Source: Cyanophora paradoxa CCMP329
Lineage: Eukaryota; Plantae; Glaucophyta
Direction of reading: 5' to 3'
DNA length: 64,000 nucleotides
Assembly (NCBI GenBank): GCA_004431415.1
Contig: QPMI01000148.1
Span: 41,782-105,781, forward strand
Position 1 is the first letter of the stretch. Each line of letters begins with the position of its first letter. A program made the translations under genes and the position numbers. The notes beneath the pieces are model-generated. The model had not been told where the DNA came from. It searched no databases and worked only from the letters and a program-made list of their open reading frames with translations. Shown piece after piece: positions 28,312-53,839 of this stretch.

Positions 28312-28954
28312 CGCCAACGCCGCGCCGCCAACCTTCAGGAGCGGCGGCTTAGCTGCGCGCGGACTGGACGCTTCAGAGACTCCTACAAGAAGCAGCGCAC
28401 TCACTACGCAAGCGGGGTCTCCTGCTCAGAGGGCCGGTTGCGGGCGTCCTCGATTAGGCTCGCAAGCTGTCCCGTCACGTCGCATGCAAGCAGGCGGCCA
28501 TGAGATCTCAAACTTCCGAGATCACTCCGTCGGGCGTGTATACACCACACACGCGCGTACTCGCTCCGCCCGCAATTTCGCTGAGCGTTGAGCCGCTACC
28601 GCAGCCTCTGATTTGCAGGTCGGGCTGGCTTTGCTCAATTCAAGCAAGTGGCCTCTATTGCTGGGATGACGATCTCCTGCCGCCGGTGCTCCGCGTGAAA
28701 GTTGATGCAGCGTTAGTAAATGACTGTACCCTGGCGCTTCGTTCGCAGCTTCGGTTTTGGTCGTAGCAGGTGCGGAGGCTCGCTCGCTCGACCCACTAGC
28801 TCGCTCGAACAGATCCTTGCGCCGAGCAGCCAGCGCTTGCTTCGAGCCGCCAGCGCCAGGGGCCCCTGCTTGATTCCGCCCTGGGCCCCGCGGTGGCGGT
28901 GGCGAGGGCGCGCGCTCCCCGCGGCGCCCTTCTGCCGCTGACCGTCTCGCAGGC

Positions 28955-29990
28955 ATGGGCAGGGGCTGGATCCAGGCAGAGGGGAAGCTGGACCTGACGT
29001 ACGCGGGGCGAACGGAGTGGCCGGCGGCGGAGATCGCGCAAGCGGGACCGGAGAACATCCGCGTGCTCAACCTCGACGGGAACAGGCTCTTGCGTATCCC
29101 GGGCGCCGAGCTCGCCAAGCGAAGGAGAGGCTTTGGTTGCAGGACAACCGGCTTTCGGCGTTGCCGTCGGAGATCGGCCTCCTCGTCGCCCTGCAGAAGC
29201 TGATCGTGAGTGACAACCAGCTGACGGCGCTGCCGCCGGAGATCGGCCGCCTCGCCGCCCTGAAGGAGTTGTGTATCAACGGCAACCCCGTCGTGCTCTC
29301 GTTGCCGGAGTCCGTCCGGCGCGCCGTCAACAACAACTCCAATGTCGGCGACTCTGCTGGGGAAGCCCAGTGCGCCACCGTCGTGCCCTACCTCCGCTCC
29401 CTTCCCGTCCCCGCCCCCGCGGTGCGCTCCGCCGTGCGCGCCGCCCCCGCGCGCCGCCCCTCACTGCCCACCGCAGCCCGCCCCGCAACCCCCCGCCGCC
29501 CCGCCCGTCCCGCACCCCCCTGCCGCCTTCGCCCCTCCGGCCCCAGGTCCTCCCCCCCCTTCACTCCACCCGCCATCCCGACGCGGGCCGCAGCGGGAGG
29601 CGCCGCGGACGCTCCCCGGCCCCTGAAGGCGGTGGCGGGGCAGCTGGAGGCGGCGGCCGTGCGCCTGCGGGAGGAGGCGCGGGCCGCCGCCCTCGCCTCG
29701 GCGAGGGTGGAGGCCCTCGCGGCGGAGCGGGCGGAGGCGCGGGCGGAGCTCGAGGCGGCGGCGCAGCGCGAGCGGCGGGCGGCGGCGGAGGCGGCGGGAC
29801 TCCGTGGGCGGCTGGCGGAGGCGGAGGCCGCGCGTCTCCGGGCCGACGAGCGGCTGGCGCTGTACGAGGGCGGCAGCGCCGGTGGCGCGCCCGGCGGCCG
29901 GCCCTGGGGCGAGGCGGAGCTCGCGGCGGCGGCCGAGCGGCTGAAGGCGGCCCTGGCGCGCGTGGAGGAGCTGCGGATCGCTGCTGCGGA
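28955..29990 (+). pseudogene. LRR array copy A: LRR-coiled coil, frameshifted, RING deleted
   Basis: MGRGWIQAEGKLDL...IPGAELAK, then a frameshifting deletion near 29120 relative to paralogues; LRRs continue in another frame; coiled coil nearly identical to copy B; near 29980 the sequence jumps to the shared 3' region and skips the RING exons. Confidence 0.8.
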
Positions 29991-29995
29991 TCCTG

Positions 29996-30766
29996 GCGGC
30001 GGCGCCACGCGTCGCAGCTCCAAACTCTTTGCTGCGCGGCGCCGCGAGTCGCAGCTCCGGTTCTGTTTACGGGCTCAGCCGTGTACGCGCACCCTCGCGC
30101 CGACCGTTTCTCTCTATAGCTAGATCTGTGCTGCGCATGCAGCCTTCATTCTTAGCCCAACCCCTATAGCTACGCGCATCCTCGCGCCGGCTGCGTGCTG
30201 AGCTCCTTTCTGCAGGCTAGATCAGCGATGGCTAGTGGTCCCAGCCCGCCGCCGCCACTCTTTCCAACCTCATGTCTACGTATACTGCGCAAGTACGTCT
30301 GCAGTTCAAGTTCGAGTAGTTTGATTTCAATGTTCAGAGGTCGAGTTCAATTGCAAGCTGTTATAATGAAGAGCCAATACTAAAAGCTGTTACAATATTA
30401 ATTGAGAGCATTAAGGGTTACGATCGGGGCGCCACGAAGGGCCGTCCCGGCCCCGAAGGCCCTCCGCCCCGAAGGGAAGTCCTCGCCGGAGACACGAGGG
30501 ACTGAACTTCGGAAAGGCGTCCGAAGGAAGGGAGGGGGGGTGGAGGGGGGGGGGGGGTCGGCCCCGAAGGGATCGCTCCTTCGGGAGCCTCGGAGCCCGG
30601 CGCTTCGCCCTACCCCAGCGGACCCCTTCTAGATCTAGAAAGAGGGGGGGCCGAACGGGGGGGTGGGGAGAAAGGGGAATAGAGGATAGTATAGGATAGG
30701 ATACGGGCCCGCTCGCACAACCCGTCGACGTCTACATGAAGGCCCAAGCTATCCCGCTCTTGCTGA
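29996..30766 (+). repeat. Duplicated 3' flank shared by LRR copies A and B (second copy about 34506-35279)
   Basis: Near-identical text from gcgccacgcgtcgcagctcc to ggcccaagctatcccgctcttgctga in both places. Confidence 0.92.
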
Positions 30767-30783
30767 AGTAGAAAACGCAGTAC

Positions 30784-32299
30784 CCCGCTTGTTGACGGTG
30801 TACATCTCTTACCCGTAGACGCGCCGCACCCGCACGGCGATCGATCGCTCGCCATTACCTGTACCCCCGCCGGCCGGGTCAGGGGTGCGGGGGTCAGGGT
30901 GGGGGAAAGCAAAGGAAGGAGGGAAAGGAAACACGCACCTTGGCGCCCTCGAGGCGCGCGTAGAAGCGGAAGATGTTACCTGGGGGGTATGGGTGAGGGG
31001 CCGGGGGATACGAGAGTTGGGAAGAAAGGGGTACGGACTCTTTGTGGAACATGCCTCGCAGCTGCGCCGGAGGGCGAGCAGGGGTACAGGCATCAGGAAC
31101 GGGGATGGAGCTGAAAAGGGGTACGGGCGCTCGCCTCGTTGAGCTCCTCGTGGGGCACGTACCCGGAGCGGGTCCGTACCGTCTCGTCTGCGGGGGTACG
31201 TCGTTGGAGGCGGTCTCGGGGTGCGGGGAGGGGCCGCACCCATGCGAGCGAGGCGCCACATTTCGGGAAAGTCGTCTATGATCTTGCGGATGGGGCGCGC
31301 GCGGCTTGCCCGCCCCGCGCGCCCCGTCTCAGCGATCCCCGCGCGGTGCCGGGCGGGCGGGCGGGCGAGCGCGCCGGGCCTTGACGGGGTCGAGGTCGGC
31401 GAGGCGGCGGGTGCGCGTGCGGACGAGCCCGCCAACGTCCAGCGACTGCCGCGGCTTCACCGCTGCGCCCAAAGCGCTCAGCTTCCGGCGGCGGGACCGG
31501 CGCCTAAGCCTTTGAGCGGGCGGACCGGGGTCCCAGAAGGGGCGGCCGCGGCGGATGTGCTCCACGGCGCTGCCGAAGCTGTGCGAGGCGCGCGGGTCGC
31601 CGTCGTTGTACGCCAGGCACACCAGCAGCTGCTCCGCCCCGTCCTGCGCCGCAGCGATCAGAGCAGGACGGGGAGGGGGCGGCCCGGGGTGGGCCCGGCG
31701 CGGGCCTTCCACATGCGCTTGTTGAGGGCCATTTCGCCGTGGCGCAGGTACAGAGCGCCGTCAGCGTGGGGCGAGCCGGCGCCGCCGCGCAGCCGCATCG
31801 TCCGCAGCAGCCCGATCGACTCTGACACCGCCTGCGACTCTGCCGCCCCGCCCCGCCCCGCCCCGTGAGGCCCCGGCGGCCCCTGCTGGCCCGCAGCTCC
31901 TGGCGGGGCGGGGCGGGGCGGGGCGCACGGGAGCTGCGGCGGCTGAGCTGAGCCGGTGCGGTCGCCGCGCGGAAGTCCGCCGGGAAGGCCGGCAGCGAGA
32001 GGGGCGGCAGGGGCCCGGCGGCCCCGGCGCCTCCGCCGCGCGCGTGAGCGTCAGCGCCGGCGGGGGCGGCGCGGCGGCCGCCCCGCGCGGAAGGGGCTCG
32101 CTGGGGCCGTCGCGGGCGCGGAGAGCGGCGCCGGCGGCGAGTGGGAGGGGGAGGGCGGGAGGGTAGAGCCGGAGGCCGTTGGCGTGGCGGCCGCGGCGGC
32201 GGCGGAGCCCGCGCGGTCGTGGGAGGGGCCCGCGCTCGACGCTGCGACGTCGGCCGACGCCGCCGCACCGTCGGCAGGCGCGTCCTCCTCAGAAGCCAT
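30784..32299 (-). pseudogene. Truncated duplicate (5' exons) of the 18288-28311 gene, unit 2
   Basis: MASEEDAPAD... through IRKIIDDFPEMW and IFRFYARLEGAK to MYTVNKR, after which homology ends. Confidence 0.8.
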
Positions 32300-33150
32300 C
32301 GCCAACGCCGCGCCGCCAACCTTCAGGAGCGGCGGCTTAGCTGCCCGCGGGCTGGGCGCTTCAGGGACGTCTACAAGAAGCAGCGCACTCACCGCGCGAG
32401 GGCTCCTGCTCAGGGCCGGTTGCCGGCGTTCTCGATAAGGCCCGCAAGCTGCCCCGTCACGCCGCGGGCAAGCAGGCGGCCATAAGATCTTCAACTTCCG
32501 AGATCACTCCGTCAGGCGTGTGTACACCACACACGCGCGTACTCGCTCCGTCCGCAAATTCGCTGAGCGTTGAGCCGCTATCGCGGGCCGGGCTGGCTTT
32601 GCTCAATTCAAGCAAGTGGCCTGAGCACTGGCCTCTATTGCTGCGATGACGATCTCCTGCCGCCGGTACTACGCGTGAAAGTTGATGCAGCGGGCAAACG
32701 ACTGTACCCTGGCGCTTCGTTCGCAGCAGCTCGCTGCGGTTCGCAACACTTCGCATGCGCAGCAGCGATATCGCCCGGCCCGCAGGGCCGCCGCGCGCGC
32801 TTGCTCCTCCTAGCGTTCTAGCTCCTAGCGTTCTAGCTCCTAGCGTCAAGCAGCGAGCGCCGGCTTCGAGCGGCCTAGGCCTGCAGAACTCTTGACCGCG
32901 CGGGCTCGGTCGCTTGCTGCGGCAAGGCGATCCATCGAAGGTGAGCGACGCCCTGGCGGGCACATAGGGCGATATCAAGCATCGCCGGGCTCCGGCGCCA
33001 TGACGACGATGATGACGTCGAAGTTGCATCCGAGTAAGTTTCGGGCTGAAGCCCAGAGCGGCCCAGCACTGGGGAACTTCGGAACGCCGATCGAGCGGGG
33101 CGGGGGCGCGCTCCCCGGGGGGCGCTTCTGCCGCTGACCGCCCCGCAGGC

Positions 33151-34483
33151 ATGGTCAGGGGATGGATCCAGGCAGAGGGAAAGCTGGACCTTTGGGGGGA
33201 AGGGCGGACGGAGTGGCCGGCGGCGGAGATCGCGCGGGCGGGGCCGGAGAACATCCGCCACCTCGACCTCGACGGGAACAGGCTCACGAGCATCCCGGGG
33301 GCCGAGCTCGCCAAGCTGAGGAACCTGAAGCAGCTGTGGTTGAATCGCAACCAGCTGGCGGCGCTGCCGCCGGAGATCGACCGCCTCGCCGCCCTGGAAA
33401 AGCTGTGTTTGAACTGCAACCAGCTGACGCGGGCGCTGCCGCCGGAGATCGGCCGCCTCGCCGCCCTGCAAGTGCTGGGCGTGAGCGACAACCTGCTCAC
33501 ATCACTTCCGCCCGAGATCGGCCGCCTCTCTGCCCTGCAGACTCTGTACGTGGACGGCAACCCCGTCGTGGACTCGTGGCCGGAGCCCGTCCGCCGCGCT
33601 GTCGACCGGGGCGATGGTAAAGCCCAGTGCGCCGCCGTCGTGCCCTACCTCCGATCCCTCCTCGCCCCCACCCCCGCGGTGTGCCCCGCTGCGCACGCGG
33701 CTCCTGCTTTCCGCCCCTCACCCCCCGCTGCAGCCCGCCCCCGCCGCCCCGCCCGCCCCGCAACCCCCCGCCGCCCCCGCCCCTCCGGCCCCAGGTCCGT
33801 GCTTCCCCTTTCGGACTTCTCCCTCCAACCTCCCGACGCGGGCCGCAGCGGGAGCCGCCCCCGATTGCCCACTGCCCCTGGAGGCCTTTGCCGGGCAGCT
33901 GGAGGCGGCGGCCGCGCGGCTGCGGGAGGAGGCGCGGGCCGCCGCCCTCGCCGAGGCGCGGGCGGCGGCCCTCGCGGCGGAGCGGGCGGAGGCGCGGGCG
34001 GAGCTCGAGGCGGCGGCGCGGCGGGAGCGGCAGGCGGCGGCCGAGGCGGAGGCGCTGCGCGGGCGGCTGGCGGAGGCGGAGGCCGCGCGTCTCCGGGCCG
34101 ACGAGCGGCTGGCGCTGTACGAGGGCGGCAGCGCCGGTGGCGCGCCCGGCGGCCGGCCCTGGGGCGAGGCGGAGCTCGCGGCGGCGGCCGAGCGGCTGAA
34201 GGCGGCCTTGGCGCGCGTGGATGAGCTGCGGATCGCCGCGCGGGCCGCCGCGCTCAACCGATTCGAGTGCCCGGTGCGCTGCAGTCTGAGCCAGCGGCCG
34301 TTGGCCCGCTCGATGCTGGGCCGGCAGGTGTGCTGGGAGGAGAAGGAGCGGGGGGAGCGGCGGCTCCTGCACCCTTGCGGGCACGTCGTCTGCGCGGCCT
34401 GCGTCCAGCGGCTCGCTGACGGGGCGGGAACGTGTCCCATTTGCCGCGAGCCCTTCGGGGGGTCCGTCCCCATCTACGATTGA
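33151..34483 (+). CDS. LRR array copy B: LRR-coiled coil-C3HC4 RING, putative E3 ubiquitin ligase
   Basis: Five LRR strands in one exon with an LPPEIGRLAAL framework, an Ala/Glu/Arg coiled coil, and spliced RING FECP|VCWEEKERGERRLLHPCGHVVCAACVQRLADGAGTCPICREPFGGSVPIYD*. Confidence 0.88.
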
Positions 34484-35279: not shown

Positions 35280-37165
35280 GATCGGGTACCGGAAAATTTG
35301 CGGCACCGCGACGATTACGGCGGCGCGGCGGGCCAGGCTTCCCTCGTGAGGGTGCCTGATAACGCTGCGTGTCAAGCTGCTCGGAAAGTCGCGGGCCAGC
35401 GCCTCCCGTCCCCTGTAGCCAGAACTAGCTAGACAACCCAGCGCGGCGTCTTTCAAGAGTCGAAACGGAGTCCCTGCCGCCAGTTAGGCCTTCGGACGGA
35501 AATCGGAGCGGCCCGCGACGGCGGAGCGCCCGCCAGCGCCGTCGCGGAAAGACCAGCAACGCAGATCTAAGCACGCATGTCGCCCGCAGATCTAAGCTGG
35601 CGCCGCCGACTTCCTGACAGACAAATCGCGCTCCTGCCTCTTTCAACCCTCACTTTCATCTCTCTTTATGTCTCTCACGCGCGCTGCCGTGCCACAGGCC
35701 GAGCGCACGGAAACGAGCAGGCGCTGGCAAGCGCATCTCCGAGCCGCGGCTCGCCGCCGCAGCCTCCGACACGCGGCCGCCCGGTTCGATCTACAGCCTG
35801 TGAGTTGACCCGCGGTTCGCCTCGCCGCCGCCCGCGCGCTCGCAGATGACGGAGGCGCCACGCCGTCGACGCCGAGCCAAGCTGGACTTCAGCGACGCCC
35901 TCTTGATCGCGGTCGGCGACCTCAACACATGATCGTGATGCTGACTACTACGCTGCCGCAGAGCGCAAGTGCAGGAACGTCCACGACAGCGAGACGTAGA
36001 GCCGTGACACCTCCTCCCCGATGCTAGGGCCCACGGGCGCCCACTCGGACCTCCCCGCTCTTCCCCGAGGTCAGAGCCCACGGGCGCTCGCTCGATCGAC
36101 CCGCGCCGCTTCCCGCCCTCGCCGCCGCCGTCCGCAGCCGTGGAGCGGCCCCCCCGCCCCGCCGCGCCGTGCCCTTCCCGCCCTCGCCGCCTCCGCCCGT
36201 CACCCCGCCCGTCGCCCTTCCCGCCCTCGCCGCGCCCTTCCCTTCCCGCCCTCGCTGCCTCCGCCCGTCGCTGCGGGCCGGGCCCGCCGCGCCGCCGCGC
36301 CCCGCCCTTCCCGCCCTCGCTGCGCCCCGCCCTTCCCGCCATCGCCGCCTCCGCCCGGCGCCGCGGGCCGGCCCCCCCGCCCCGCCGCGCCCCGCCCTTT
36401 CCGCCCTCGCTGCCTCCGCCCGTCGCCGCGGGCCGGGCCCGCCGCGCCGCCTCGCCCCGCCCTTCCGCCCTCGCCGCCGCCGTCCGTAGCCGTGGAGCGC
36501 CCCTCCGCCCCGCCGCGCCGTGCCCTTCCCGCCCTCGCCGCCTCCGCCCGTCGCCCCGCCCGTCGCCCTTCCCGCCCTCGCTGCGCCCCGCCCTTTCCGC
36601 CCTCGCTGCCTCCGCCCGTCGCCGCGGGCCGGGCCCGCCGCGCCGCCGCGCCCCGCCCTTCCCGCCCTCGCCGCCTCCGCCCGGCGCCGCGGGCCGGCCG
36701 GCCCCCCGCCCGCCGCGCCCCGCCCCTCGCCGCCTCCGCCCGTCGCCCCGCCCGTCGCCCTTCCCGCCCTCGCCGCGCCCCGCCCTTCCCGCCCTCGCTG
36801 CCTCCGCCCGGCGCCGCGGGCCGGCCCCCCGCCGCCGCGCCCCGCCCTTCCCGCCCTCGCTGCGCCCCGCCCTTCCCGCCCTCGCTGCCTCCGCCCGTCG
36901 CCGCGGGCCGGGCCCGCCGCGCCGCCGCGCCCCGCCCTTCCCGCCCTCGCCGCCTCCGCCCGGCGCCGCGGGCCGGCCCCCCCGCCCCGCCGCGCCCCGC
37001 CCCTCGCCGCCTCCGCCCGTCGCCCCGCCCGTCGCCCTTCCCGCCCTCGCCGCGCCCCGCCCTTTCCGCCCTCGCTGCCTCCGCCCGTCGCCGCGGGCCG
37101 GGCCCGCCGCGCCGCCTCGCCCCGCCCTTCCCGCCCTCGCCGCCGCCGTCCGTAGCCGTGGAGCG

Positions 37166-37196
<31 letters not shown>

Positions 37197-37683
37197 CCCC
37201 GCCCCGCCGTGCCCTTCCCGCCCTCGCCGCCTCCGCCCGTCGCCCCGCCCGTCGCCCTTCCCGCCCTCGCTGCGCCCCGCCCTTTCCGCCCTCGCTGCCT
37301 CCGCCCGTCGCCGCGGGCCGGGCCCGCCGCGCCGCCGCGCCCCGCCCTTCCCGCCCTCGCCGCCTCCGCCCGGCGCCGCGGGCCGGCCCCCCGCCCGCCG
37401 CGCCCCGCCCTTCCCACCCTCGCCGCTGCCGCCCGTCGCGGCGGGCCCCCCGCCCCGCCGCGGCCCGCCCCTCCCCCTAGCTACCTCGTAGTTCCTGCCA
37501 TAGCACCGCCTAACGTTAGCCCCACCCGATGATCACTGACATGCAGACAACCAACACACTTAGGCAAACACCAAACACAATTCTTTCCATATCCCTAGAA
37601 TATTCCGCCGAGTGGCCCATGTCCGCCGGTTGGATCCTGTGTTCGAATCCGAAACATTGCCCACATGGGCTTTTGAAAAAAAA
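35280..37683 (+). mobile_element. 2.4-kb non-coding insertion with 16-bp TSD, internal VNTR and A tail
   Basis: atcccgctcttgctga at 35264-35279 and 37684-37699; A8 tail at 37676-37683; the paralogous empty site with one copy of the motif is at 30751-30766. Confidence 0.9.
36100..37470. repeat. C-rich VNTR inside the 35280-37683 insertion
   Basis: Irregular reiteration of gcccttcccgccctcgc(c/t)gcctccgcccg and cgccgcgggccg subunits; the long Pro/Arg ORFs here are artefacts. Confidence 0.9.
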
Positions 37684-37716
37684 ATCCCGCTCTTGCTGAA
37701 GTAGAAAACGCAGTAC

Positions 37717-39232
37717 CCCGCTTGTTGACGGTGTACATCTCTTACCCGTAGACGCGCCGCACCCGCACGGCGATCGATCGCTCGCCATTACCTGTACCCC
37801 CGCCGGCCGGGTCAGGGGTGCGGGGGTCAGGGTGGGGGAAAGCAAAGGAAGGAGGGAAAGGAAACACGCACCTTGGCGCCCTCGAGGCGCGCGTAGAAGC
37901 GGAAGATGTTATCTGGGGGGTATGGGTGAGGGGCCGGGGGATACGAGAGTTGGGAAGAAAGGGGTACGGACTCTTTGTGGAACATGCCTCGCAGCTGCGC
38001 CGGAGGGCGAGCAGGGGTACAGGCATCAGGGGTAGTGATGGAGCTAGAGGGGGTACGGGTGATCGCCTCGTTGAGTTCCTCGTGGGGCACGAACCCCGAG
38101 CGCGCCCTCACCGTCTCGTCTGTGCGGGGTACCAGCGGTCACGGAGTACGGGAACGGGCCGCACCCATGCGAGCGAGGTGCCACATTTCGGGGAAGTCGT
38201 CTATGATCTTGCGGATGGGGCGCGCGCGGCCTGCCCGCCCCGCGCGCCCCGCCTCAGTTATCCCCGCGCGGTGCCGAGCGGGCGGGCAGACAGCCGCGCC
38301 GGGCCTTGACGGGGTCGAGGTCGGCGAGGCGGCGGGTGCGCGTGCGGACGAGCCCGCCAACGTTCACCGCTGCGCCGAAAGCGCTCAGCGGCCGGCGGCG
38401 GGCCCGGCGCCTAAGCCTTTGAGCGGGCGGACCGGGGTCCCAGAAGGGGCGGTCGCGGCGGATATGCTCCACGGCGCTGCCGAAGCTGTGCGAGGCGCGC
38501 GGGTCGCCGTCGTTGTACGCCAGGCACACCAGCAGCTGCTCCGCCCCGTCCTGCGCCACGGCGCTCAGAGCAGGGCGGGGACGGAGCGGCCCGGGGCGGG
38601 CCCGGCGCGGGCCTTCCACATGCGCTTGTTGAGGGCCATTCCGCCGTGGCGCAGGTACAGGGCGCCGTCGGCGTGCGGCGAGCCGGCGCCGCCGCGCAGC
38701 CGCATCGTCCGCAGCAGCCCGATCGACTCCGACACCGCCTGCGACTCTGCCGCCCCGCCCCGCCCCGCCCCGTGAGGCCCCGGCGGCCCCTGCTGGCCCG
38801 CGGCTCCTGGCGGGGCGCCGGGCGGGGCGGGGGGGGCGGGCGGGGGCGCACGGGAGCTGCGGCGGCTGAGCTGCGCCGGTGCGGTCGCCGCGCGGAAGTC
38901 CGCCGGGAAGGCCGGCAGCGAGAGGGGCGGCGGCGGCCCCAGCGGCCCCGGCGCCTCCGCCGCCCGCGTGAGCGTCAGCGCCGGCGGGGGCGGCGCGGGG
39001 GCAGCCCCCGCGCGGAAGGGGCTCGCCGGGCCGTCGCGGGCGCGGAGGGCGGCGCCGGCGGCTCGGGCGGCGCGTGGGAGGAGGCGGGCGGGAGGGCAGC
39101 GGCGGAGGCCGTTGGCGCGTCGGCGGCGGCGGCGGCGGCGCCCGCGCGGTCGTGGGAGGGGCCCGCGCTCGACGGAGCGAGGTCGATCGACGCCGCCACA
39201 CCGTCAGCTGGGGCGGCCTCCTCTGATGCCAT
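37717..39232 (-). pseudogene. Truncated duplicate of the 18288-28311 gene, unit 3
   Basis: MASEEAAPAD... with the same exon series and the same breakpoint as unit 2. Confidence 0.8.
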
Positions 39233-40067
39233 CGCCAACGCCGCGCCGCCGGCCAACCTGCAGAAGCGGCGGCTTAGCTACGCGCGGGCTGCAGCTGGGC
39301 GCTTCAGGGACGTCTGCAAGAAGCAGCGCACTCACCACGCAAGCGGGGCCTCCTGCTCAGGGCCGGTTGCGGGCGTCCTCGATAAGGCTCGCAACCTGCC
39401 CCGTCATGCCGAGGGCAAGCAGGCGGCCATGGGATCTCCAACTTCCGAGAACTCTGGCAGCTGGTGTACGCTCACGCGTGCTAGGTCCGCCCGCAATTCG
39501 CCGGGTGCCGTCCACGCTGCAGGCTGGCGTGGCCCGGTTCGAGCACGCCGCGTTTCTGCTCTAACGAAGATCTCCTTCCGCCGATGTTCCGCGTGCAAGC
39601 AGACCCCCGCCGTCAGCGCGAGACCGTACCCCGCTCGGAGCCGCCCGTACCCCGCTCATGACCGCTAGTGTGACAAAGGCTGCTGTGTGTCCGGCGCTTT
39701 GTTTGGACGTTCTCTTCGGAGGTAAGCATGGCCGAGCTCTTTCTGTTTCCGAGCAGCAGGCGAGCTGTGACGCTGTGACGGCCAGGTGACCACTGACCAG
39801 CCGCAGACTGTAGCCGGTAGCCGCAGACCACTGTCGCGAGTCAGCAGTCAACAGTTAACGTACGTAGGCGATCCGTCGACGGTGCGCGAGTCAGCAGCGC
39901 GACGCTGGGCGGGCGCAAAGCCTGCTTCCATTAGTTGCCCCTGCAATCTCCCCATAGGCCGCCGTACGAGTTCGCTCCCCCGAGCCGCGACTCGGGACCC
40001 GCCGGGCGGGGCGGGGGCTCGCTAGCGCTCCCCGCTGCGCGCTTCTGCCGCTGACAGCTCCGCAGGC

Positions 40068-43517: not shown

Positions 43518-45041
43518 CCCGTTTGTCGACGCGCCGTGCCCGGTCCGCGATCGCCTTCACCTGTACCCCCGTCGGCCGTGTCAGAAGCGGGGAGCGACGG
43601 AAGGGGAGGGGTACACGCGCCTTGGCGCCATCGAGGCGCGCGTAGTAGCGGAAGATGTTCCGCACGGGGATGTAGTACCTGGGGGGTACGGGTGAGGGGC
43701 CGGGGGGGGGGAAGAGTTGGCTAGGAAGGGGTACGGACTCTTTGTGGAACATGCCCCGCAGCTGCGCGGGAGGGCGAGCAGGAGTGCAGGAATCAGGGGC
43801 GGGGATGGAGCCGAAAAGGGGTACGGGCGCTCGCCTCGTTGAGCTCCTCGTGGGGCACGTACCCCGAGCGCGTCCTCACCGTCTCGTCTGCCGAGGGGTA
43901 CGGGGTCGGAGGCGATCACGGGGTGCGGGGAGGGGCCGCACCCATGCGAGCGAGGCGCCACATTTCGGGGAAGTCGTCTATGATCTTGCGGATGGGGCGC
44001 GGCCTGCCCGCCCCGCGCGCCCCGCCTCAGTTATCCCCGTGCGGTGCCGAGCGGGCGGGCGGGCGAGTGCACCGAGCTTTGACGGGGTCCAGGTCAGCGA
44101 GGCGGCGGGTGCGCGTGCGGACGAGCCCGCCAAAGTCCAGCGACTGCCGCGGCTTCACCACTGCGCCCAAAGCGCTCAGCGGCCGTCGGCGGGCCCGGCG
44201 GGCGGCGGCGCTCGATCGGCGCCGGTCTAGTCGCTGGGACTGGCGGACCGGGATCCCAGAAGGGGCGGTCGCGACGGATATGCTCCACGGCGCTGCCGAA
44301 GCTGTGCGAGGCGCGCGGGTCGCCGTCGTTGTACGCCAGGCACACCAGCAGCTGCTCCGCCCCGTCCTGCGCCACGGCGCTCGGACCCGGGCGGGGACGG
44401 AGCGGCGCGGGGCGCGCCCGGTGCGGACCTTCCACATGCGCTTGTTGAGGGCCATTTCGCCGTGGCGGAGGTACAGGGCGCCGTCGGCGTGCGTCGAGCC
44501 GGCGCCGCCGCGCAGCCGCATCGTCCGCAGCAGCCCGATCGATTCCGACACCGCCTGCGACTCTGCCGCCCCGCCCCGCCCCGCCCCGTGAGGCCCCGGC
44601 GGCCCCCGCTGGCCCGCGGCTCCTGGCGGGGCGCCGCGGCGGGGCGGGGCGGGGCGGGGCGGGGGCGCACGGGAGCTGCGGCGGCTGAGCTGCGCCGGTG
44701 CGGTCGCCGCGCGGAAGTCCGCCGGGAAGGCCGGCAGCGAGAGGGCGGCGGGGGCCCGGCGGCCCCGGCGCCTCCGCCGCGCGCGTGAGCGTCAGCGCCG
44801 GCGGGGGCGGCGCGGCGGCCGCCCCCGCGCGGAAGGGGCTCGCTGGGGCCGTCGCGGGCGCGGAGGGCGGCGCCGGCGGCGCGTGGGAGGGGGAGGGCGG
44901 GAGGGTAGAGCCGGAGGCCGTTGGCGTGGCGGCCGCGGCGGCGGCGGTGCCCGCGCGGTCGTGGGAGGGGCCCGCGCTCGACGCTGCGACGTCGGCCGAC
45001 GCCGCCGCACCGTCGGCAGGCGCGTCCTCCTCAGAAGCCAT
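43518..45041 (-). pseudogene. Truncated duplicate of the 18288-28311 gene, unit 4
   Basis: MASEEDAPAD... to RNIFRYYARLDGAK/VKAIADRARRVDKR; the last exon lacks the GEEMYTVN segment. Confidence 0.8.
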
Positions 45042-46879
45042 CGCCAACGCCGCGCCGCCAACCTGCAGGAGCGGCGGCTTAGCTGCGCGCGGGCTGGGCG
45101 CTTCAGGGACGTCTACAAGAAGCAGTGCACTCACCGCGCGCGAGGGCTCCTGCTCAGGGCCGTTTGCCGGCGTTCTCGAGGTGGCTAGGCTCGCAAGCTC
45201 TCCCGTCAGGGCAAGGGCACGCAGGCGGCCATAATCTGATCTGATGGGCGGGTGTACGCAACACGGCGGGCGTTCGCGCTCCGCCCGCAATTCGCCGGAC
45301 GTTTGAGCGATCTATATGATCTCTTCCTGCCGGTGTTCCATGTGCAAGCAGATGCAGTGCAAGGAGCTGCCAAGGAGCTGCTACCGGCTGCTGAGGACTG
45401 CTGGTATATACTGCAGCTGTGAGGTTCGACTGAGGGCTTGGAGTGACATGCGCTGGTCGCGAACGCAGAGAAGCCGCGAAGCGGCGAACGAAGTGAGCTC
45501 TACCTGTCTGAATTCGAAGTTCGAGGAGGGTCCCTTTTTTTCGCTAACAAAAACGGGTACAAGATTCACAAAAACTCAATCGAAAGATACGTCGAGCGTC
45601 AGTCCAAAGTCGCCGTCACGGTAGTGTTTTGTGACGCCGTCACGCCCAGGTAATCATTACAAATGCATAAGATTAAGAATGGGCTAGGGCATAGTTTGCA
45701 GCGCAACGCGTTGCATGCGCCAAAGCTTGCGCAATCGGCCTTGGGGAAAGGAGAGGCCCTTAGGTCTGTTGGTATCTTGTCACAAATTTTAGAAAGCGAA
45801 ATTCGTATTTTTGAAGACACCTACTACCCCATTTTAGACCCTGGGGAGCACGATATCGATGGTCCGGCCCGTTTTCCTATGAGAGGCCTCTAATGGGCAG
45901 TAACAGCACCTCGAAAAGCACAGAAAAGCATTTTCCCGGAAAAAAACAGAAAGCGCAAATCACATTGGCCTTCCAAGTCGAAATTTGAAAATTATTAATT
46001 TCAAGAGACCGCACCTCATTCGCTAGCAAATAGTTTCCAAATTAACGGAGCGCCACATGGACGGCCAGCAAATTTGTATGAGACAGGGTCGCAGTGTGCC
46101 ACGATGTGGGATTTAAAAGTATTTGATGCGTTAGTTGAAAGATTATCAAAATAAACAATTTCGACATTTTTTTTTTGAGAGACTACGGTGGGGCGAACCC
46201 CCCGTAGGTAGTGATATTAAAGACAACAAAGCAATCACAAATCAAAGATACAGTAAACTAGCACAAAATATATACAGAATCAAGAGGGATCACGAGAAAG
46301 GACACGATCAGAAGAACGCAAAAGATAAGGAGAACGAGCACGAGGAGAAGGAGTAGAAGAGCTCAAGGGCGTCGATGCAGAAGTACTAGTCACACTAGAA
46401 CGACGAGGAGCACGGGGACGCAGCTTATTAATTATAACGACAGAGGCTTATTAATATTACTGCGAATTAAATTCAAATGATTCATAGATAATTATTAACC
46501 ACCTCCAATTTGGCAAAAAGCGCCGAAAGTCGTTTTAATTTCATTCAGCTGCGCATGCGACGACCAATGGGCCCCTCGGGGCCTGTACTCGGTACAATTG
46601 CGGCCGATTGGGCCCCGCATCGATATCTGTACCCTTGCGGCACAATTCTGTACACAATTCTGTGTACCCTTGCCTAGTGGACCCCCTGTTTCTCCTCCCC
46701 CCTCCCCCGTAACCGCGCGCGGTTGCGGCCGCGGGCGCCGGCCGCGGCCCCCGTTTAAAAACAAAGAGCTGCCACCCTCACGCCGCGAAGCCCCAAGACC
46801 CAAGGCCACTCCTGCTCCGCAGGGACTCGCTTGTTGCAAGCGCCGGAGTCGAGGGAACGTAGAGTTGATGTATCCCCAG

Positions 46880-47417
46880 TAGGGCTGTCGCGGTACGGCG
46901 CGGTAGCGGTAGACTGGTCCTACCGACCGGCCCGGTAGACTTGCCCGGTCTACCGTCATACAAGCCCGGTAGCCATACAAATTCGCCCGTTGGGGGGTAG
47001 CCGGGCGCGCCCCGGGCACCCGGCACGCTACGCATGCTGCATTCAATTCAATTCTAACATCTCTGTTTTCTTTAAGTTCATCTTCCTGCGCTCCTGCCTC
47101 GAGAATATTTAATGGCATCCGAATTTTCAAGAACAAGGTCATGGCTGACAACCACCCCGCACTATAGCTAGCTACTTCCTCACAACTGGGGCTCCTCGAT
47201 CACCCCGCAAGCACAAGCTGTAGATGCGCAAAGTAGCGTGTAAACAGTTTAGGCGCGTAGCGCCTTGGAGCTTGACGAATTTTAGCTTGATTTTGCGTCA
47301 GTTTTCGCGTACTATGCGTGCCAGCCGTGACCTACTGGGCGTACCCGGTCGGTACGGGTCAGAGAGGTCTACCGACCGGGTAGATCTAGAGGGGGGGGGT
47401 CTACCGTGACAGCCCTA
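46880..47417. mobile_element. 538-bp non-autonomous hAT-type element
   Basis: 16-bp TIRs tagggctgtcgcggta / taccgtgacagcccta (one mismatch); 8-bp TSD atccccag at 46872-46879 and 47418-47425; subterminal ctaccg/cggtag repeats. TAGGG termini with an 8-bp TSD are hAT hallmarks. Confidence 0.88.
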
Positions 47418-47835
47418 ATCCCCAGGTCGACCTGTCTAAGTACCCTGGTCGCAGCGCTTTCGACTGCTTTGCCGTCGGCGGGCTTTCGGAGGTCATCTTT
47501 GTGATCAGGTACGTCCGTTTTGAGAGGTCAGGTACGTTCGTCTTGAGATCCTATTGTGCCGTATTGCCGCAGGTCTCTGGACTCGGCACGTGGGGAACCA
47601 TGCCCAAGGAAGTCGCAGGTGCTGCGCATGCGAATTCGAAAGGCGTGAAATTAAACGAATGGTAGGCGCGCTTGCGATGTGATCGTGCCGACTACGCTCG
47701 GCTATCAGCGTTATCATCTCTTGCGGCTTCGCTCTTTCAGGAGATCTAGAGCTGCCCCGCAGATCGAAACCATTAGCATCTCCTCGTTAAGCACTAAAAC
47801 GCTATATATATAGCCGCGAACGCGCGCGCGTACGT

Positions 47836-48100
47836 GGGCGGAGGCGCGGCGGGCGGCAGCACGGCTCGCCGGGCGGGGCGCGCGTAGGCGCGGCGGGCGG
47901 CGGAGCGGCGCGCCGGGCGGGGCGGAGGCGCGGCGGGCGGCGGCACGGCTCGCCGGGCGGGGCGGATCCCGGAGGCGCGGAGGGCAGCGGCGCGGCTCGC
48001 CGGGCGGGGCGGAGGCGCGGCGGCAGGCGGCGGCACGGCTCGCCGGGCGAGGGCGTGGCTAGAACGCGGCGGGGCGGCGCGGGCCGGGGCGAGGCGCGGT
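47836..48100 (-). repeat. Degenerate ~40-bp GC minisatellite, same family as 63183-64000 in opposite orientation
   Basis: Units like ggctcgccgggcggggcggaggcgcggcgggcggc. Confidence 0.75.
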
Positions 48101-50693
48101 GGGCGCTATTAGAGTCAGGCGCCGGCGGCCTAGAAGCTGTCTTCACGTGTTGTTGGGGAAGGGAAAATCACTTCCCCTGTCCCTCTCCTTAGGGCCCAAC
48201 CCTACCCCAAATCCTGTTTCCCCGACCTCCTCAAAACCCCGGCCGCGCGGTATATCCTGAAAGCACATCCGAAGGGGACCCCGAAACCATGTCGCCCGGT
48301 CCCGTCCGACCAAAGGGTGATCCAGGAACGGGCACCAACTCCCGGGACAAAAACGGGTCCAGCGACGCATAGGGAGCAGATATACGAGCCAAACCAGTTC
48401 GAGGTCGTTGCACGCATCATGAACAACATTCCGTACAGCGGGAGCAAGGCCGGATGCGAGCGCGGTTGCGTGGGAGGACGCCGCGCGCCCTAGCCAATCA
48501 CATTAGAGAGTCAGTTAACTTACCCTGAGGAAAGTCTTTTCGCGGACCCCCCCGGCCGCTTTCTCCCTCCCGCCCTGGCCAGCGCTTTCTCCTAAGCTTC
48601 CCGACAGCCCGGCCGGCCGCGGCGCTCTCTGTCACGCGCGCCTCTCGCGCGCGCGGCAGTCTGCTGTAGCTAGCCGCGCCATGAACGCCACAGCCGCTCC
48701 AACCGCACGCACCCCGGTCGCAAGCCGGCCACAAGCCGGTCGCACTAGCTTGCGCCGTGGGGTCGACGTCGCATCAGGTTTGCCCGCGGCGCGCCAGCTG
48801 CGCAGGAGCCCGAGGCCATGTCCGCGCCGCGCAATGCCCCGGGCCCGCGCGCGTCCGCGCGCCGGGCGCCCGGCCGGCGCGGCAGTACGAGCTCGCGCGC
48901 GACGGCCGCGGGGCAATTGCAAGCGCATGCGCAGGTTGCGAACGTCTAGATCTGGCCATGGCCAGCAGCGCGCCTCGAGCTCCGATCCGATCGATCCGAT
49001 CATGCGCACTCGCAACACACGCACATGCCTACCTTCATGCACGGTGCGCTCGCAGCTACGCAGCGCCCCTTGGTACCAGTCTTTGCCCGCTCAGTTGCAT
49101 TATCTCGCCCTAGGCCCTCCGGTCCATTCGGCGTGTCCCGCAATCGCGCGCGTGACGTCGACGGCCTCGCGCTCGCGCGTGACGGGGCATGCGCAAGCGC
49201 AGGAGCAGACATGTACATCCACAAGGTTTGCGAGCCATCCCGGCCCACTGCGCCGCGTCCAACCTCTTCTAGCCTCCTCTTTCGAATTTTATATTTAGCC
49301 TCGAAAACAGCTCGCCTGCAGCTGGCGCCGGCCTGGCGTCGGATGGCCGCGGCCACCGCCTTCAAGGCTTCTGGACCGGAGCCTCGGAGCGCTAGCTCTG
49401 CTTTTCTTCTATTTGAATGGACGCAGCGGTCCTTCAAGATCTCTCTCTAGATTCCTTTCCTGCTCTCTAGATCTCCGGATTCAAGCCATCGCCCCAAATT
49501 CGCGAGTGACTTTCCCTTCCCCGGACCCCGCAGCGGCGTGCACGAGCACGACCCCTTCCGAGCGCGCGCCGCAGCGGGCCCTTTATAATTCAGAACGTTT
49601 AAATTTAACGTTAACCCCCCTTGCACATCCTGATCATGAGATCTAGACGAGCAGGGGCGGGCGGGGGCGAGTCGAAGACCTAGTATATGCATGCTGCAAT
49701 CACATAACTTAAGTTATAATTAGTAAAGGACTTGGTCGCCGATCCGGGCCGAGCCGAGGGCCGGGGTCGCGCGCTCCGCGCGCGACCCCGAGCTCGAGGG
49801 GAGGTCAATCAACGTTAACGTTGAAGGCATCAAGGCATCTTCGAATTAAAAATATTCAAGCTAGCGCTCGCGATCGCCGATCGCGAGTCGCGTATACGTA
49901 CTAGCTTTCACTGCGTTCGCCCCCACTTGCCATCGGCAAGAGGGCACTTGTACCCCTGCGCTCCATATTTACCAAACCGCAGCTAGGTTCGAAGCCGGCT
50001 GTTTTCTGGCATCGCCCGCCTCTCGCTACGCTCACATGCAGCTCACTCTTAGATCCCCGCCCCGCGCAGTGGACTTGCCGCCAGCAGACAGCGCGCGACC
50101 ATCGAGGAACTGCTGACCGCGTGGGCTCTATCGGTTCGGAAAGCTCGGCTCTGCATCGGCAAGGCGATCCTTCGAAGGTGAGCTCCTCCGGGTGGACGCA
50201 TGGCCTGGATTGCTGTCTAGTTGCCGCTGGGCGGATCCCGGTCTAGAATTTACGAATTGCTTCGCTCTGGGCTGCACGGGGCGCCGAGGAGCGTGCTAGG
50301 TCGCTTTCGGATCCCACCTAGCGACGCGGCGGGCGCGCGGGAGTCGGCTAAGATGCGGGGCGAGTATGTGTGGCCGGGCCTGTGGGGGGGGCTCCGCGCT
50401 CCGGCGTCGCTTGCTGCCTCGTTCGCCAACCCACGAACGGGGGGAGGGGGGGAGGACCCAGCGCGCGCCGGGGCGCGGAGGTGCAATCTCCCTTAGGCCG
50501 CCGTCGCTCCCCCGAGCCGCGACTCGGGCGGGGCGGGGCGGCCGGTAAAGGCAGAGCCCGGCGCGCGCGTGCACCGCCCCCTGCGGGAGGGGCTCAGCGC
50601 GGGTCGGGCGGCCCCCCGCAGGCTGGGGACCCGCCGGGCGGGGCGGGGGCGCGCTCCCCGCGGCGCGCTTCTGCCGCTGACCGCCCCGCAGGC

Positions 50694-53600
50694 ATGGGCG
50701 GCTGTCGTAGCAAACAGAGGTGGATCCCGGCGGAGGGCAGGCTGTGCCTGGCGTGGGAGGGGCGGACGGAGTGGCCGGCGGCGGAGATCGCGGCGGCGGG
50801 GGCCGAGCTCGCCAAGCTGACGAACCTGGAGGGGCTGTGGTTGAACGGCAACCAGCTTACGGCGCTGCCGCCGGAGATCGGCCGCCTCGCCGCCCTGAAG
50901 GAGCTGTACGTGCACAGCAACCCAGTCGTGGATTCGTGGCCCAAGCCCGTCCGCCGCGCCGTCAACGAGAACACCGGTATGCTGAACAAGAAAAACGGTG
51001 CTGCGCAGTGCGCCGCCGTCGTGGCCTACCTCCGCTCCCTCCCTGCCCCCGCCCCCGCCGCCACGGTGCGCACCGCCGCCCCGCCCCCGCGCCCTGCCCC
51101 TCACCTCCCGCTGCAGCCCGCCCCCGCCGCTTTGAGCGATTCCGCGGCCTCACCCGCCGCCCCGGTGAGGCTCCCCGCCTCCGACCCAACCCCGCGCCCC
51201 TCACCCCTGCCCCGCAGCCCGCTTCCGCCCCGGCCCCCCCGCCGCCCCGGCCCCTCCGCCAACCGGTCCCCGCATCCCCTCTGTTCGCCCCTGTGTCGCC
51301 GGCCCTCTGACGCCTTCCCGTCGTGCAGCGGCGCCCGCCGCTGGAGGCGCGCCCGCCCCCGTACCCGCCTCGGCCACCGCCCGCCCCCGCCCGCCGAAGC
51401 GGTGCGTTCCGCGCCGCCGCGGTGCGTCCCTCTGCGCCTCCTCCCGCGCGCGCCCGCCCCTCACCTCTCCTCGCAGCCCGCCCCCGTGCCCTCGTCAGCC
51501 CAGCGCTCTCCCGCCGCCACGGCCCCTCCAGCCCCCCCCGGTCCGTGGACGCCTTTTCGCGAGCTCTTCTTTTGCCTTCTGGTGCGAGCTCATGTGCAGA
51601 GACCTCGGCGTCACCGGCAGCTTCTCTCGCCACCGTCGCCGTGGCGCCTGCTGCTGCAGCAGCCTCGCCCCCGGCCGCTCTCACCGCCGCCGCCCCGGCC
51701 GCCCCCGCCCCGGCTCCCGGTCCGTCCAGACGCCCCTCCCGCTTCCTTCCTTCGTTCCGATGCTTCCTGCAGCGGTGCCCGCCTCGCCTGCCGCCACCGT
51801 CGCAGCCTCGCCCGCCGCCGCAGCGCCGCCGCCGCAGCAGCCTCGGCCTTCTGCCGCCGCGGTGAGCCGTGTCGCACCGCCTCTACAAAACTCGCCCCTC
51901 ATGATGACCTCCTGCCGCAGCCCGCCCCCGCTGCCTCGGCCCCGCTTCGGCCCCAGAGTTGGGGGTCGTTCCCTGGAGACCGGAAATTTGACCTGTCAGA
52001 AGAGAGGCGGACGGAGTGGCCGGCGGCGGAGATCGCGGCGGCGGGGCCGGAGAACGTCTTGGAGCTCAACCTTGACGGAAACAATCTGTCACGTATCCCT
52101 GGGGCCGAGCTCGCCAAGCTGACGAACCTGGAGAAGCTGTTCTTGAACCGCAACCAGCTGACGGCGCTCCCTCCAGAGATCGGACTTCTCTCCTCCCTGC
52201 GGGAGCTGCTCGTGTTCACCAACAAGCTGATGTCGCTGCCGCCGGAGATCGGCCGCCTCACGGCTCTGAAGCGCCTAAACGTGGCCGACAACCGGCTGAC
52301 ATCGCTCCCTGTCGAAATCGGCAGCATCCCCGCAATGAAAGAGCTGAACGTGAATGGAAATCCTCTCAAGGACATGCCGGAGCTGCGCGGCAAGGATGAC
52401 GAAGCTGCCCTCGCTTACCTCCGCTCCCTCGCCCCCGCCGTGCGCCCCGCCTCGCCGCCCCCACCCTCGCGGCCGACCCTAATTTCCTGCTGCAGCCAGC
52501 CCCCGCTGCCCCGCCCACCCCGCACCCTGCCGCCGCTGCAGCCGTTGGAGCGCGGGACCCGCGGGGCATGCGCATGGCGGACGTGTGCGAGTGGCTGCGG
52601 TCCGTCGAGCTCGGGGACCTCGCCCCGGCCTTCGAGAGGCACCGCGTGGACGGCAAGATGCTGCTGGAGCTGACGGAGGGCGACCTTCAGCGCGAGCTCG
52701 GCGTCGAGTCGGGCCTCGTCCGCCGCCGCGTACTCAAGGAGGCGCGCCCGCCCCCGCCCCGCCGCCCCGCGCCCGGCCCGGCTGAGGCCCCCCCGCCAGA
52801 TCGCTGACCTCGCGAGGGAGCACGGCCTCGCCAGCGCGGCGCCGAGCGCGCCCCGGGCCCGTCCGCAGAGCGCCGCCGCCGGTCGCGTCCCGCCGCTGCC
52901 CCCGGGCTACGAGTTTCACGCCTTGTGCGCCGCCGTGCCCAGTTGAACTTCTTTCGCCCGCCCCTGAGGCCCGCGCAGCATCACGTACCGGCGGCTGGAC
53001 GGGAAGAACCTCCTCGCGTCGCTTGTGCGTGAGGCGTTGGACAAGCTCGGGTGCGGCCACAGGTGCCCGCCTCGCGCCCTGCTGCCCCTGACGCGGCGGA
53101 AGCTACAAGGTCTTCTTCGACCTGCAGACCCTCCAGGGCGGCGTCTTCGACTCGAAGATCCTTGAGAGCCTCCGCCGCTCCTGCTGCGACGGCGCGCCCC
53201 GCCGGCGACCCCTGCCGCGCCCGCCCTCCCGCCACCGCCCCCCCCCCCCCCCCCGCCCCCCCCCCCCCCCTCCCTCTCCCCCCTACCCGCTCTGACGCCC
53301 GTGCGCAGTCTTCGTGCTCACGCCGGGCACTCTCGACCGCTGCTTCGAGGACAAGGCCCCCTCGGCCGCCCTCTCTAACGACTGGTTCCGCCCGCCCGGC
53401 AGCGCCGCCCCCCGCACCTCCCCCGCCGATCGCTGGGCGGGGCGCGACGCAGGGTGCGGAAAGAGATCGCGGAGGGGTGCCGCCTGCGCAAGGCGATCAT
53501 CCCCTTCGTGGACGACCCGGCCCAGCACTTTCCCGCCTGCGACGGCCTCCCCGCCGACATGGCCGCGTTCTCCCGCCACAACGGTCCGCCCCGCGCTCAC

Positions 53601-53839
53601 GTCCGCCCGAGCTTTCAAGTGTCGATCCGCGCGCTGCTGACGCCTTTTCGGCCGCAGCGGTCTTTTTCAACAACATGTACCAGCAGGCAGTCATCGCCCG
53701 CCTCTGCGCCCTCATCGACGCCGCCGTGGCCGACGCCGCCGTCCGCCCTTCCTCTCCCCCTTTCGAGGCGCCCGCTGCCGGCCGCTGACGGGGCGCGCAT
53801 GCGCAGCCGTTCGAGGAGCTGCCGGCCCCCCTCGCGTAG
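50694..53839 (+). CDS. LRR array copy D: N-terminal acylation motif, LRR-linker-LRR-SAM-TIR (SARM1-like)
   Basis: MGGCRSK start; LRR block 1 (two strands); Pro/Ala linker exons; LRR block 2 (five strands, about 51955-52430); SAM MRMADVCEWLRSVELGDLAPAFERHRVDGKMLLELTEGDLQRELGVESGLVRRRVLKE; TIR FHAFITYRRLDGKNLLASLVREALDKLGYKVFFDLQTLQGGVFDSKILESL...VLTPGTLDRCFED...DWVRKEIAEGCRLRKAIIPFVD...LPADMAAF; ends PFEELPAPLA*. Linker splicing not fully resolved. Confidence 0.85.

What the first reader, a model, noticed from the sequence alone, without database searches (positions are those of the whole stretch)
28955..53839. Candidate protist immune-receptor array: one LRR sensor module fused to alternative effectors (SAM-TIR or RING)
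Seen: four tandem co-oriented paralogues share an LRR exon (GRTEWPAAEI cap ... YLRSL cap) but differ downstream. A is coiled coil only (broken), B is coiled coil-RING, C is SAM-TIR-CaaX, D is a second LRR block plus SAM-TIR. Known: SARM1 is ARM-SAM-SAM-TIR and acts by NAD+ cleavage; LRRs are ligand sensors in TLRs, NLRs and VLRs. No NB-ARC/NACHT or transmembrane segment is visible, so these are neither NLRs nor TLRs. Inference: a birth-and-death cluster of intracellular receptors in which LRR replaces the ARM sensor of SARM1, with a RING sibling that routes recognition to ubiquitination or regulates the TIR forms. I do not recognise this as a described system but cannot search.
Basis: partly seen in the sequence, partly recalled or inferred. 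Interest (0 to 1): 0.92.

Follow-up and report, generated by a model that had tools for sequence, protein, structure and literature searches.

The report
Algal LRR receptors with swappable effectors
The alga Cyanophora paradoxa has a tandem cluster in which one variable leucine-rich-repeat "sensor" exon is joined either to an NAD-cutting module like that of the human axon-death enzyme SARM1 or to a ubiquitin-ligase finger; it looks like an undescribed innate-immune-type receptor family, but no ligand or function has been tested.

Summary
Observation confirmed, with corrections. The window is Cyanophora paradoxa; gene D is EukProt tig00000600_g2283. Four + strand paralogues share one LRR exon ending in a phase-0 intron.
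- B: intact 389-aa LRR-coiled coil-RING.
- A: a decayed copy of B (frameshift, RING deleted), not a third architecture.
- C: LRR-SAM-TIR-CaaX. RNA-like contigs splice its LRR cap to its SAM. A 1-nt gap at 40166 (error or mutation) is unresolved.
- D: LRR-LRR-SAM-TIR with a myristoylation-type start; not checked in RNA.
Both TIRs keep the E642-equivalent glutamate and hit SARM1 best in the PDB. They sit in a Cyanophora-only clade and have one SAM and no ARM, so they are SARM1-like, not SARM1 members. The LRR C-cap matches the Roco LRR-Roc hinge. Exposed LRR positions vary strongly (pN/pS 1.56 versus 0.44). Each effector is closer to copies on other contigs than to its neighbours, and the repeated unit includes a truncated head-to-head partner gene. 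The family has at least 20 gene models; I found no paper on it. The scan has already reported it on other contigs. Immune role inferred (about 0.6).

The parts
26640..28593 (-). u1: 5' part of the parent partner gene (spliced, family unknown), head-to-head with A; further exons continue to at least 24788
28955..30123 (+). Gene A: decayed LRR-coiled-coil(-RING) copy; frameshift near 29120; RING exons deleted at about 29990-30000, where it joins B-type 3' sequence
30767..32727 (-). u2: 3'-truncated copy of the partner gene plus shared upstream region
33151..33678 (+). Gene B LRR exon (N-cap, repeats, Roco-type C-cap), ends in a phase-0 intron; AlphaFold mean pLDDT 95.5
33734..34483 (+). Gene B Pro/Ala linker, coiled coil and C3HC4 RING (exons 33734-33794, 33849-34273, 34328-34483); whole gene 389 aa, open
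35280..37683 (.). 2.4-kb insertion ending in an A-run, flanked by a 16-bp target-site duplication, at the B/u3 junction
37700..39498 (-). u3: 3'-truncated partner copy, same breakpoint as u2; RNA-like contigs show minus-strand intron joints here (may come from the parent or other copies)
40068..40627 (+). Gene C LRR exon; one A missing at 40166 relative to paralogues
40678..41220 (+). Gene C linker exons (40678-40773, 40825-41089, 41149-41220); the middle one is seen directly in RNA-like contigs, the other two are fitted from contig length
41282..41707 (+). Gene C single SAM (exons 41282-41420, 41477-41707; intron seen in the RNA-like runs only)
41690..42457 (+). Gene C SARM1-class TIR over six GT-AG exons; E642-equivalent codon at 42182-42184
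42518..42596 (+). Gene C last exon ending in CaaX (CSVQ)
43512..45308 (-). u4: 3'-truncated partner copy with a diverged version of the same junction
45309..50100 (.). About 4.8 kb of lower-GC sequence separating u4 from gene D; presumed insertion, not identified
50694..51065 (+). Gene D first LRR block, starting MGGCRSK (myristoylation/palmitoylation-type); upstream non-coding exon donor near 50180
51920..52439 (+). Gene D second, divergent LRR block with short Roco-like C-cap
52496..53839 (+). Gene D single SAM and SARM1-class TIR (two GC donors, one AAG acceptor); E642-equivalent codon at 53463-53465; no CaaX

Best explanation
This is one cluster of a Cyanophora-specific family of cytosolic, probably often lipid-anchored, sensor-effector proteins. 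SHOWN: a single exon encodes a capped LRR solenoid whose concave-face residues, repeat number and C-cap loop vary between copies. It always ends in a phase-0 intron after the Roco-type hinge helix, and Pro/Ala linker exons join it to a SAM-TIR, another TIR type, or a coiled coil-RING. The cluster grew by tandem duplication of a unit holding a truncated neighbouring gene and the LRR gene, and the units now carry different effectors. INFERRED: recombination or gene conversion with other family loci replaced effectors or whole genes. INFERRED: the LRR binds a foreign or damage-associated ligand in the cytosol or at a membrane; ligand-driven clustering plus SAM polymerisation assembles the TIRs, which cleave NAD+ (cell death or an ADPR-type signal); the RING form instead ubiquitinates the bound target, as LRSAM1 does. 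The likely purpose is defence against viruses, mobile elements or intracellular microbes.
For: Shared exon and phase-0 hinge. RNA-like contigs of 701-713 nt, without mismatches in the listed pieces, join C's LRR cap to its linker in three runs and run on to SAM exon 1 in two, while the DNA-type run is unspliced; the fitted exon chain is in frame. TIR positions equal to SARM1 F565, Y568, R569, R570, D594, G601, W638, E642 and N679 are kept (E642 catalytic per PMC8295901). Exposed positions pN/pS 1.56 (bootstrap 1.07-2.79) versus 0.44; 81 distinct face pentads among 89 family repeats. At least 20 EukProt models on at least 10 contigs carry the LRR module with several effector types. C TIR is 85% identical to copies on tig20528 and tig56, D TIR 90% to tig532, but C versus D is 66%; B's coiled coil-RING is 87-99% identical to parts of copies on tig56 and tig20704. 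SAM-TIR-bearing sensors form one group in 0 of 200 bootstrap trees. Precedents: LRSAM1 (PMC8567218) and brown-algal ROCO LRRs (PMC3341825).
Against: No ligand, induction, NADase or ligase data. GC3 near 0.9 compresses pS, only 10 repeat units were compared, and concave-face variability is common in any LRR family, so pN/pS above 1 is suggestive only. TIR positions equal to SARM1 W662 and H685 (and Y687 in C) are changed. One SAM may not polymerise. C may be a pseudogene. D's exon joins were not tested with RNA. The sensor tree is star-like and cannot order the swaps. The 'RNA' runs are RNA by the tool's guess only.
Confidence: 0.6

Rival explanations
1. The proteins are real sensor-effector fusions but serve endogenous signalling or quality control (membrane traffic, stress, self-recognition or mating), like SHOC2, RSU1 or the endosomal role of LRSAM1, not pathogen defence.
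For: The LRR fold is closest to Leptospira LRRs, RSU1 and SHOC2. Lipid-anchor motifs fit general signalling. No induction data.
Against: Housekeeping LRR scaffolds are usually single-copy and conserved (general knowledge). Here there are many copies, dead copies, a variable binding face and NADase-class effectors.
Confidence: 0.22
2. The expansion is mostly neutral: an LRR exon copied around by tandem duplication and mobile-element activity in an unstable region, with chance fusions and mostly dead products.
For: A is dead, C has a frameshift, the partner copies are truncated, a retro-type insertion sits in the array and a protein-primed polymerase gene lies 0.9 kb after D.
Against: Framework pN/pS 0.44 (the repeat pattern used fixes some framework sites, which lowers it), intact splice sites and catalytic residues in divergent TIRs, an intact RING, and strong coverage of the LRR exon in RNA-like runs.
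Confidence: 0.13
3. LRR and SAM-TIR exons belong to separate genes, or the fusions are assembly or annotation artefacts.
For: D's joins rest on my exon model and an automatic gene model; long low-complexity linkers; repeat-rich long-read assembly.
Against: For C, single RNA-like contigs join LRR cap, linker and SAM, and a DNA-type contig covers 40477-41187 unbroken. LRR-SAM-TIR models recur on at least five other contigs.
Confidence: 0.04

Closest known systems
SARM1 / TIR-1 (ARM-SAM-SAM-TIR NADase)
   Same: SAM followed by a TIR of the same class: best PDB hit (E 2e-16), 34-36% identity over the TIR, catalytic glutamate and BB-loop glycine kept.
   Different: LRR instead of ARM, one SAM instead of two, long Pro/Ala linker, CaaX or myristoyl-type motifs, multigene family; TIR in a Cyanophora-only clade outside the animal SARM1 group.
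LRSAM1 (LRR-CC-SAM-RING E3 ligase; PMC8567218)
   Same: Gene B has N-terminal LRRs, a coiled coil and a C-terminal C3HC4 RING, with no transmembrane segment.
   Different: B has no SAM, is 389 aa, and shares its LRR exon with TIR-bearing paralogues. Orthology was not tested and is unlikely given the lineage-specific LRR.
Roco proteins (bacterial LRR-Roc-COR; brown-algal ROCO candidate receptors, PMC3341825, PMC11378527)
   Same: Closest non-Cyanophora LRR relatives are mostly LRR-Roc-COR proteins. The C-cap matches the helix before the Roc P-loop. Birth-and-death and diversified LRRs as in Ectocarpus.
   Different: No Roc-COR GTPase. The whole LRR block is one exon, not one exon per repeat, so shuffling acts on effectors rather than on single repeats.
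Plant and animal NLRs; TLRs
   Same: LRR sensor plus TIR effector; clustered, variable genes.
   Different: No NB-ARC or NACHT, no signal peptide or transmembrane helix, and the order is LRR before TIR.
Lamprey VLRs
   Same: Capped LRR solenoid with variable repeat number, a variable concave face and a variable-length loop in the C-cap (caps listed); VLRs appear among fold hits.
   Different: Germline paralogues in the cytosol; no sign of somatic assembly; different caps.

Membership tests
SARM1 | N-terminal ARM autoinhibitory domain | tested here: not met
   LRR in its place; no ARM in Pfam scans
SARM1 | Two tandem SAM domains (octamer ring) | tested here: not met
   One SAM in C, D and family models
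SARM1 | TIR with E642-equivalent glutamate and SARM1-type motifs | tested here: met
   W662, H685 and (in C) Y687 equivalents differ
SARM1 | TIR nested in the animal SARM1 clade | tested here: inconclusive
   Cyanophora-only clade (SH-aLRT 98) drawn outside the SARM1 group, but the backbone is unresolved, the tree is the quick version and no one-clade test was run
SARM1 | NAD+ hydrolase activity | not testable with these tools
   needs an assay
NLR (STAND) | Central NB-ARC or NACHT P-loop ATPase | tested here: not met
   No P-loop in six frames of 28900-53900; none in Pfam scans
TLR | Signal peptide and transmembrane helix between LRR and TIR | tested here: not met
   Highest 19-residue hydropathy 1.1-1.6 in B, C and D
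Roco | Roc-COR tandem | tested here: not met
   No P-loop in any Cyanophora family model
Roco | LRR arm ending in the NPL..P..YL hinge cap | tested here: met
   47 of 76 Roc-bearing hits show this cap a median 19 residues before the P-loop; same cap in the family
LRSAM1 | LRR-coiled coil-RING order with intact C3HC4 | tested here: met
   Gene B
LRSAM1 | SAM domain before the RING | tested here: not met
   No SAM in B or P0128
LRSAM1 | E3 activity on cytosolic bacteria | not testable with these tools
   needs an assay
Diversifying receptor family (birth-and-death) | Many paralogues, pseudogenes, excess change on the binding face | tested here: met
   positive selection suggestive only

The most novel reading that the evidence does not exclude
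A glaucophyte has independently built a cytosolic immune-receptor repertoire without an NLR ATPase. A Roco-derived, VLR-like variable LRR exon acts as a plug-in sensor that is recombined onto SARM1-class NADase, other TIR and ubiquitin-ligase outputs, so recognition specificity and response type are shuffled separately.
Probability: 0.45. Interest if true: 0.8.

Novelty: new variant of a known kind. Interest (0 to 1): 0.62.

Why it matters
I found no description of an immune-receptor family in glaucophytes, an early-branching lineage of the plant supergroup. If these proteins work as inferred, they show a route to LRR-TIR receptors other than TLRs and NLRs, in which an LRR gates a SARM1-class NADase directly. 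They are small, soluble and easy to assay, so the questions of how unicellular algae sense pathogens and whether SARM1-type TIRs served defence outside animals become testable. This cluster adds the RING output and the anatomy of effector replacement within one tandem unit.

Tried and rejected
- Pfam on single TIR exons found nothing (too short).
- The homologue search with SAM-TIR was flooded by low-complexity words and returned only Cyanophora proteins, so I used the HMMER search of representatives instead.
- Other organisms with LRR plus this TIR: none among the 150 nearest TIRs; LRR was present only in Cyanophora proteins. Three metagenomic proteins with LRR and TIR Pfam hits and no Roc (P0083, P0093, P0118) have unrelated C-termini and no SAM on record.
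- Paired head-to-head sensor/helper model (as in plant NLR pairs): rejected. The partner is 3'-truncated at one breakpoint in three of four units, so it is best read as a hitchhiker.
- A as a coiled-coil-only effector class: rejected (deletion of B's RING).
- Terminal inverted repeats bounding the u4-D spacer: none among the 25 longest pairs shown.
- The partner gene's family was not identified.
- The careful TIR tree did not finish; the quick tree was used.
- Literature searches for Cyanophora or glaucophyte with TIR, SARM1 or NADase found no description; the library lacks most subscription papers.
- Window sequence was searched by reference, exon by exon or as stop-free genomic frames. EukProt proteins returned by the tools served as full-length stand-ins, and exons were joined only inside local scripts.
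Full report
Source and setting. The window is about 65-70% GC with short introns. The second LRR block of gene D matches EukProt model tig00000600_g2283.t1 at 100%, and that model is Cyanophora paradoxa, EP00741. The scan has already reported this family on other contigs and just upstream of this window. I treated those notes as leads and tested the claims here.

Observation. The N-cap motif and the YLRSL cap occur five times each, at the stated places. Exon-wise Pfam gives LRRs in B, C, D1 and D2, a C3HC4 RING in B and a SAM in C and D. B is an open 389-aa gene with three GT-AG introns of 54-55 nt. A aligns to B through the coiled coil, then jumps to B's 3' flank, so the RING was deleted; it also has a frameshift near 29120. 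C models as 622 aa with GT-AG introns and ends in CSVQ, but one A is missing at 40166, so the assembled frame stops after 55 codons. D starts MGGCRSK and has two LRR blocks, a SAM and a TIR whose introns sit at the same positions as in C, using two GC donors and one AAG acceptor. No P-loop and no transmembrane-like segment was found.

Transcripts. The single read-laying run covered 37500-43300. Three runs guessed to be RNA each hold a 701-713 nt contig that joins 40477-40626 (LRR C-cap) to 40823-41088 without mismatches; in two of them the listing continues to SAM exon 1 at 41282. The DNA-type run covers 40477-41187 unspliced. Fitting exons to the contig length gives an in-frame chain from LRR through SAM to the start of the TIR. 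The SAM intron and one TIR intron appear as GT..AG joints in the RNA-like runs only. Summed contig depth on the LRR exon is 59-104 in the DNA-type run against about 5 on C's unique linker. That fits many near-identical copies, though the tool warns that depth is no copy number. RNA-like contigs carry the missing A at 40166, but most of them must come from paralogues, so error versus mutation is unresolved. D was not tested.

The sensor. AlphaFold gives a confident capped solenoid (mean pLDDT 95.5), closest to Leptospira LRRs, RSU1 and SHOC2. The N-cap search returned 14 proteins, all EukProt models with this genome's tig ids (this search sees only 196-625 aa proteins). Outside Cyanophora the nearest LRRs are mostly LRR-Roc-COR proteins, and the YLRSL cap matches the helix that precedes the Roc P-loop. 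The module therefore looks like a Roco LRR arm cut off at the hinge (inference). All five blocks end in a phase-0 intron 6-11 codons after the cap, and the four genes share an acceptor two bases before the ATG. Among 10 repeat units in the window, exposed positions have pN/pS 1.56 (bootstrap 1.07-2.79) and the rest 0.44. Across the family, 89 repeats give 81 distinct face pentads. High GC3, the small sample and the fixed pattern used to pick repeats weaken this as proof of positive selection. The C-cap also holds a loop of variable length and sequence (6 residues in B, 18 in C), reminiscent of the VLR C-terminal insert (recalled analogy).

The effectors. D's SAM-TIR hits SARM1 and TIR-1 best in the PDB, and the Atlas ranks SAM-TIR_2 and SARM1 clusters first for a close relative of C. 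Identity to yak SARM1 TIR is 34-36%. Positions equal to F565, Y568, R569, R570, D594, G601, F603, C629, W638, E642 and N679 are kept; W662 and H685 are changed in both, and Y687 in C. Numbering is anchored on E642, which is catalytic per PMC8295901; the roles of the other residues are from my own knowledge. Among the 150 nearest TIRs in 1.84 billion representatives, the top eight are Cyanophora. The rest include a bacterial CHASE2-TIR, metagenomic Sel1-TIR proteins and animal SARM1s, and none outside Cyanophora carries LRRs. In a quick tree, C and D fall in a 12-row Cyanophora clade (support 98) that is not nested in the SARM1 group, on an unresolved backbone. So the TIR is SARM1-class, but the protein is not shown to be a SARM1 orthologue. 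B's layout matches LRSAM1 without its SAM (PMC8567218). The same LRR is joined elsewhere in the genome to two other TIR types, to RING (P0128) and to a WD40 protein. CaaX ends (C, P0086, P0136) or myristoylation-type starts (D, P0131) suggest membrane anchoring (inference).

How the cluster arose. Self-comparison shows four copies of a 1.8-2 kb minus-strand segment, each upstream of an LRR gene. These are the 5' exons of a spliced gene whose full copy continues leftwards from u1. Copies u2-u4 are cut at one breakpoint and are 91-94% identical to each other and to u1. The duplicated unit is thus partner fragment, shared upstream region and LRR gene. Units of common origin now carry different outputs: RING after u1 and u2, SAM-TIR-CaaX after u3, and LRR-LRR-SAM-TIR after u4 plus a 4.8-kb spacer. 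C's TIR is 85% identical to copies on tig20528 and tig56, D's is 90% identical to one on tig532, and C versus D is only 66%. Sensors with SAM-TIR never form one group in bootstrap trees, although the tree is star-like and sensors still cluster by effector more than shuffled labels do. The simplest reading is replacement of effectors or whole genes by recombination with other family loci. Direction and order are not resolved.

Mechanism and verdict. Shown: architecture, splicing of C from LRR to SAM, conserved catalytic glutamate, intact RING, multigene family, variable binding face, decay of one copy. Inferred: ligand binding by the LRR, clustering through SAM and lipid anchors, NAD+ cleavage or ubiquitination, and a defence role (about 0.6). 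Rivals are endogenous signalling (0.22), neutral expansion (0.13) and artefact (0.04). It works like SARM1 and LRSAM1 in output and resembles the brown-algal ROCO candidates (PMC3341825) in evolution, but it fails the membership tests for SARM1, NLR, TLR and Roco. I found no paper describing it. Class: new variant of a known kind; interest 0.62.

Noticed in passing
window 54726-57971 (+): Intronless 1081-aa ORF in a roughly 48% GC island, with DNA_pol_B_2 and Endonuclease_7 hits: a protein-primed polymerase of a Polinton-like or viral element, 0.9 kb after gene D. It is followed by eight copies of a 158-bp repeat at 58581-59844.
   Followed up: partly
window 35280-37683: Insertion with an exact 16-bp target-site duplication and a 3' A-run, typical of LINE-driven retroposition. 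It holds a GC-rich compound tandem repeat (36104-37476) that resembles the repeat at 63540-64000.
   Followed up: partly
window about 19000-28593 (-): Parent of the partner gene: many micro-exons, introns swollen by CTAG-rich repeats towards its 3' end, and helical motifs of the FxEFxxALxR kind. Family not identified; its 5' part is covered by spliced RNA-like contigs.
   Followed up: partly
window 45309-50100: Lower-GC spacer between u4 and gene D with an 87-bp-period repeat (47836-48096) that recurs inverted at 63180-64000; probably one or more mobile-element remnants.
   Followed up: partly
window 1-5200 (-): Exon translations look like an SMC5/6-type gene (from memory, not tested).
   Followed up: no
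EukProt models P0133, P0134, P0135, P0139, P0191 (other contigs): Related TIRs also occur without LRR: SAM-TIR-TIR-CaaX, ZZ-SAM-TIR, TIR-TIR-WW, and apparent single-pass membrane proteins (P0139; P0191 ends in a RING-like motif). TIR modules are widely shuffled in this genome.
   Followed up: partly
window 40753: If C's 1-nt gap is real, a methionine in the first linker exon lies in frame with SAM-TIR-CaaX; re-initiation there would give an LRR-less product. Speculative.
   Followed up: no
joint 40626-41292: Contigs in two RNA-like runs skip from the LRR cap directly to the SAM exon, at much higher depth than C's own linker; probably a paralogue with a short linker.
   Followed up: no
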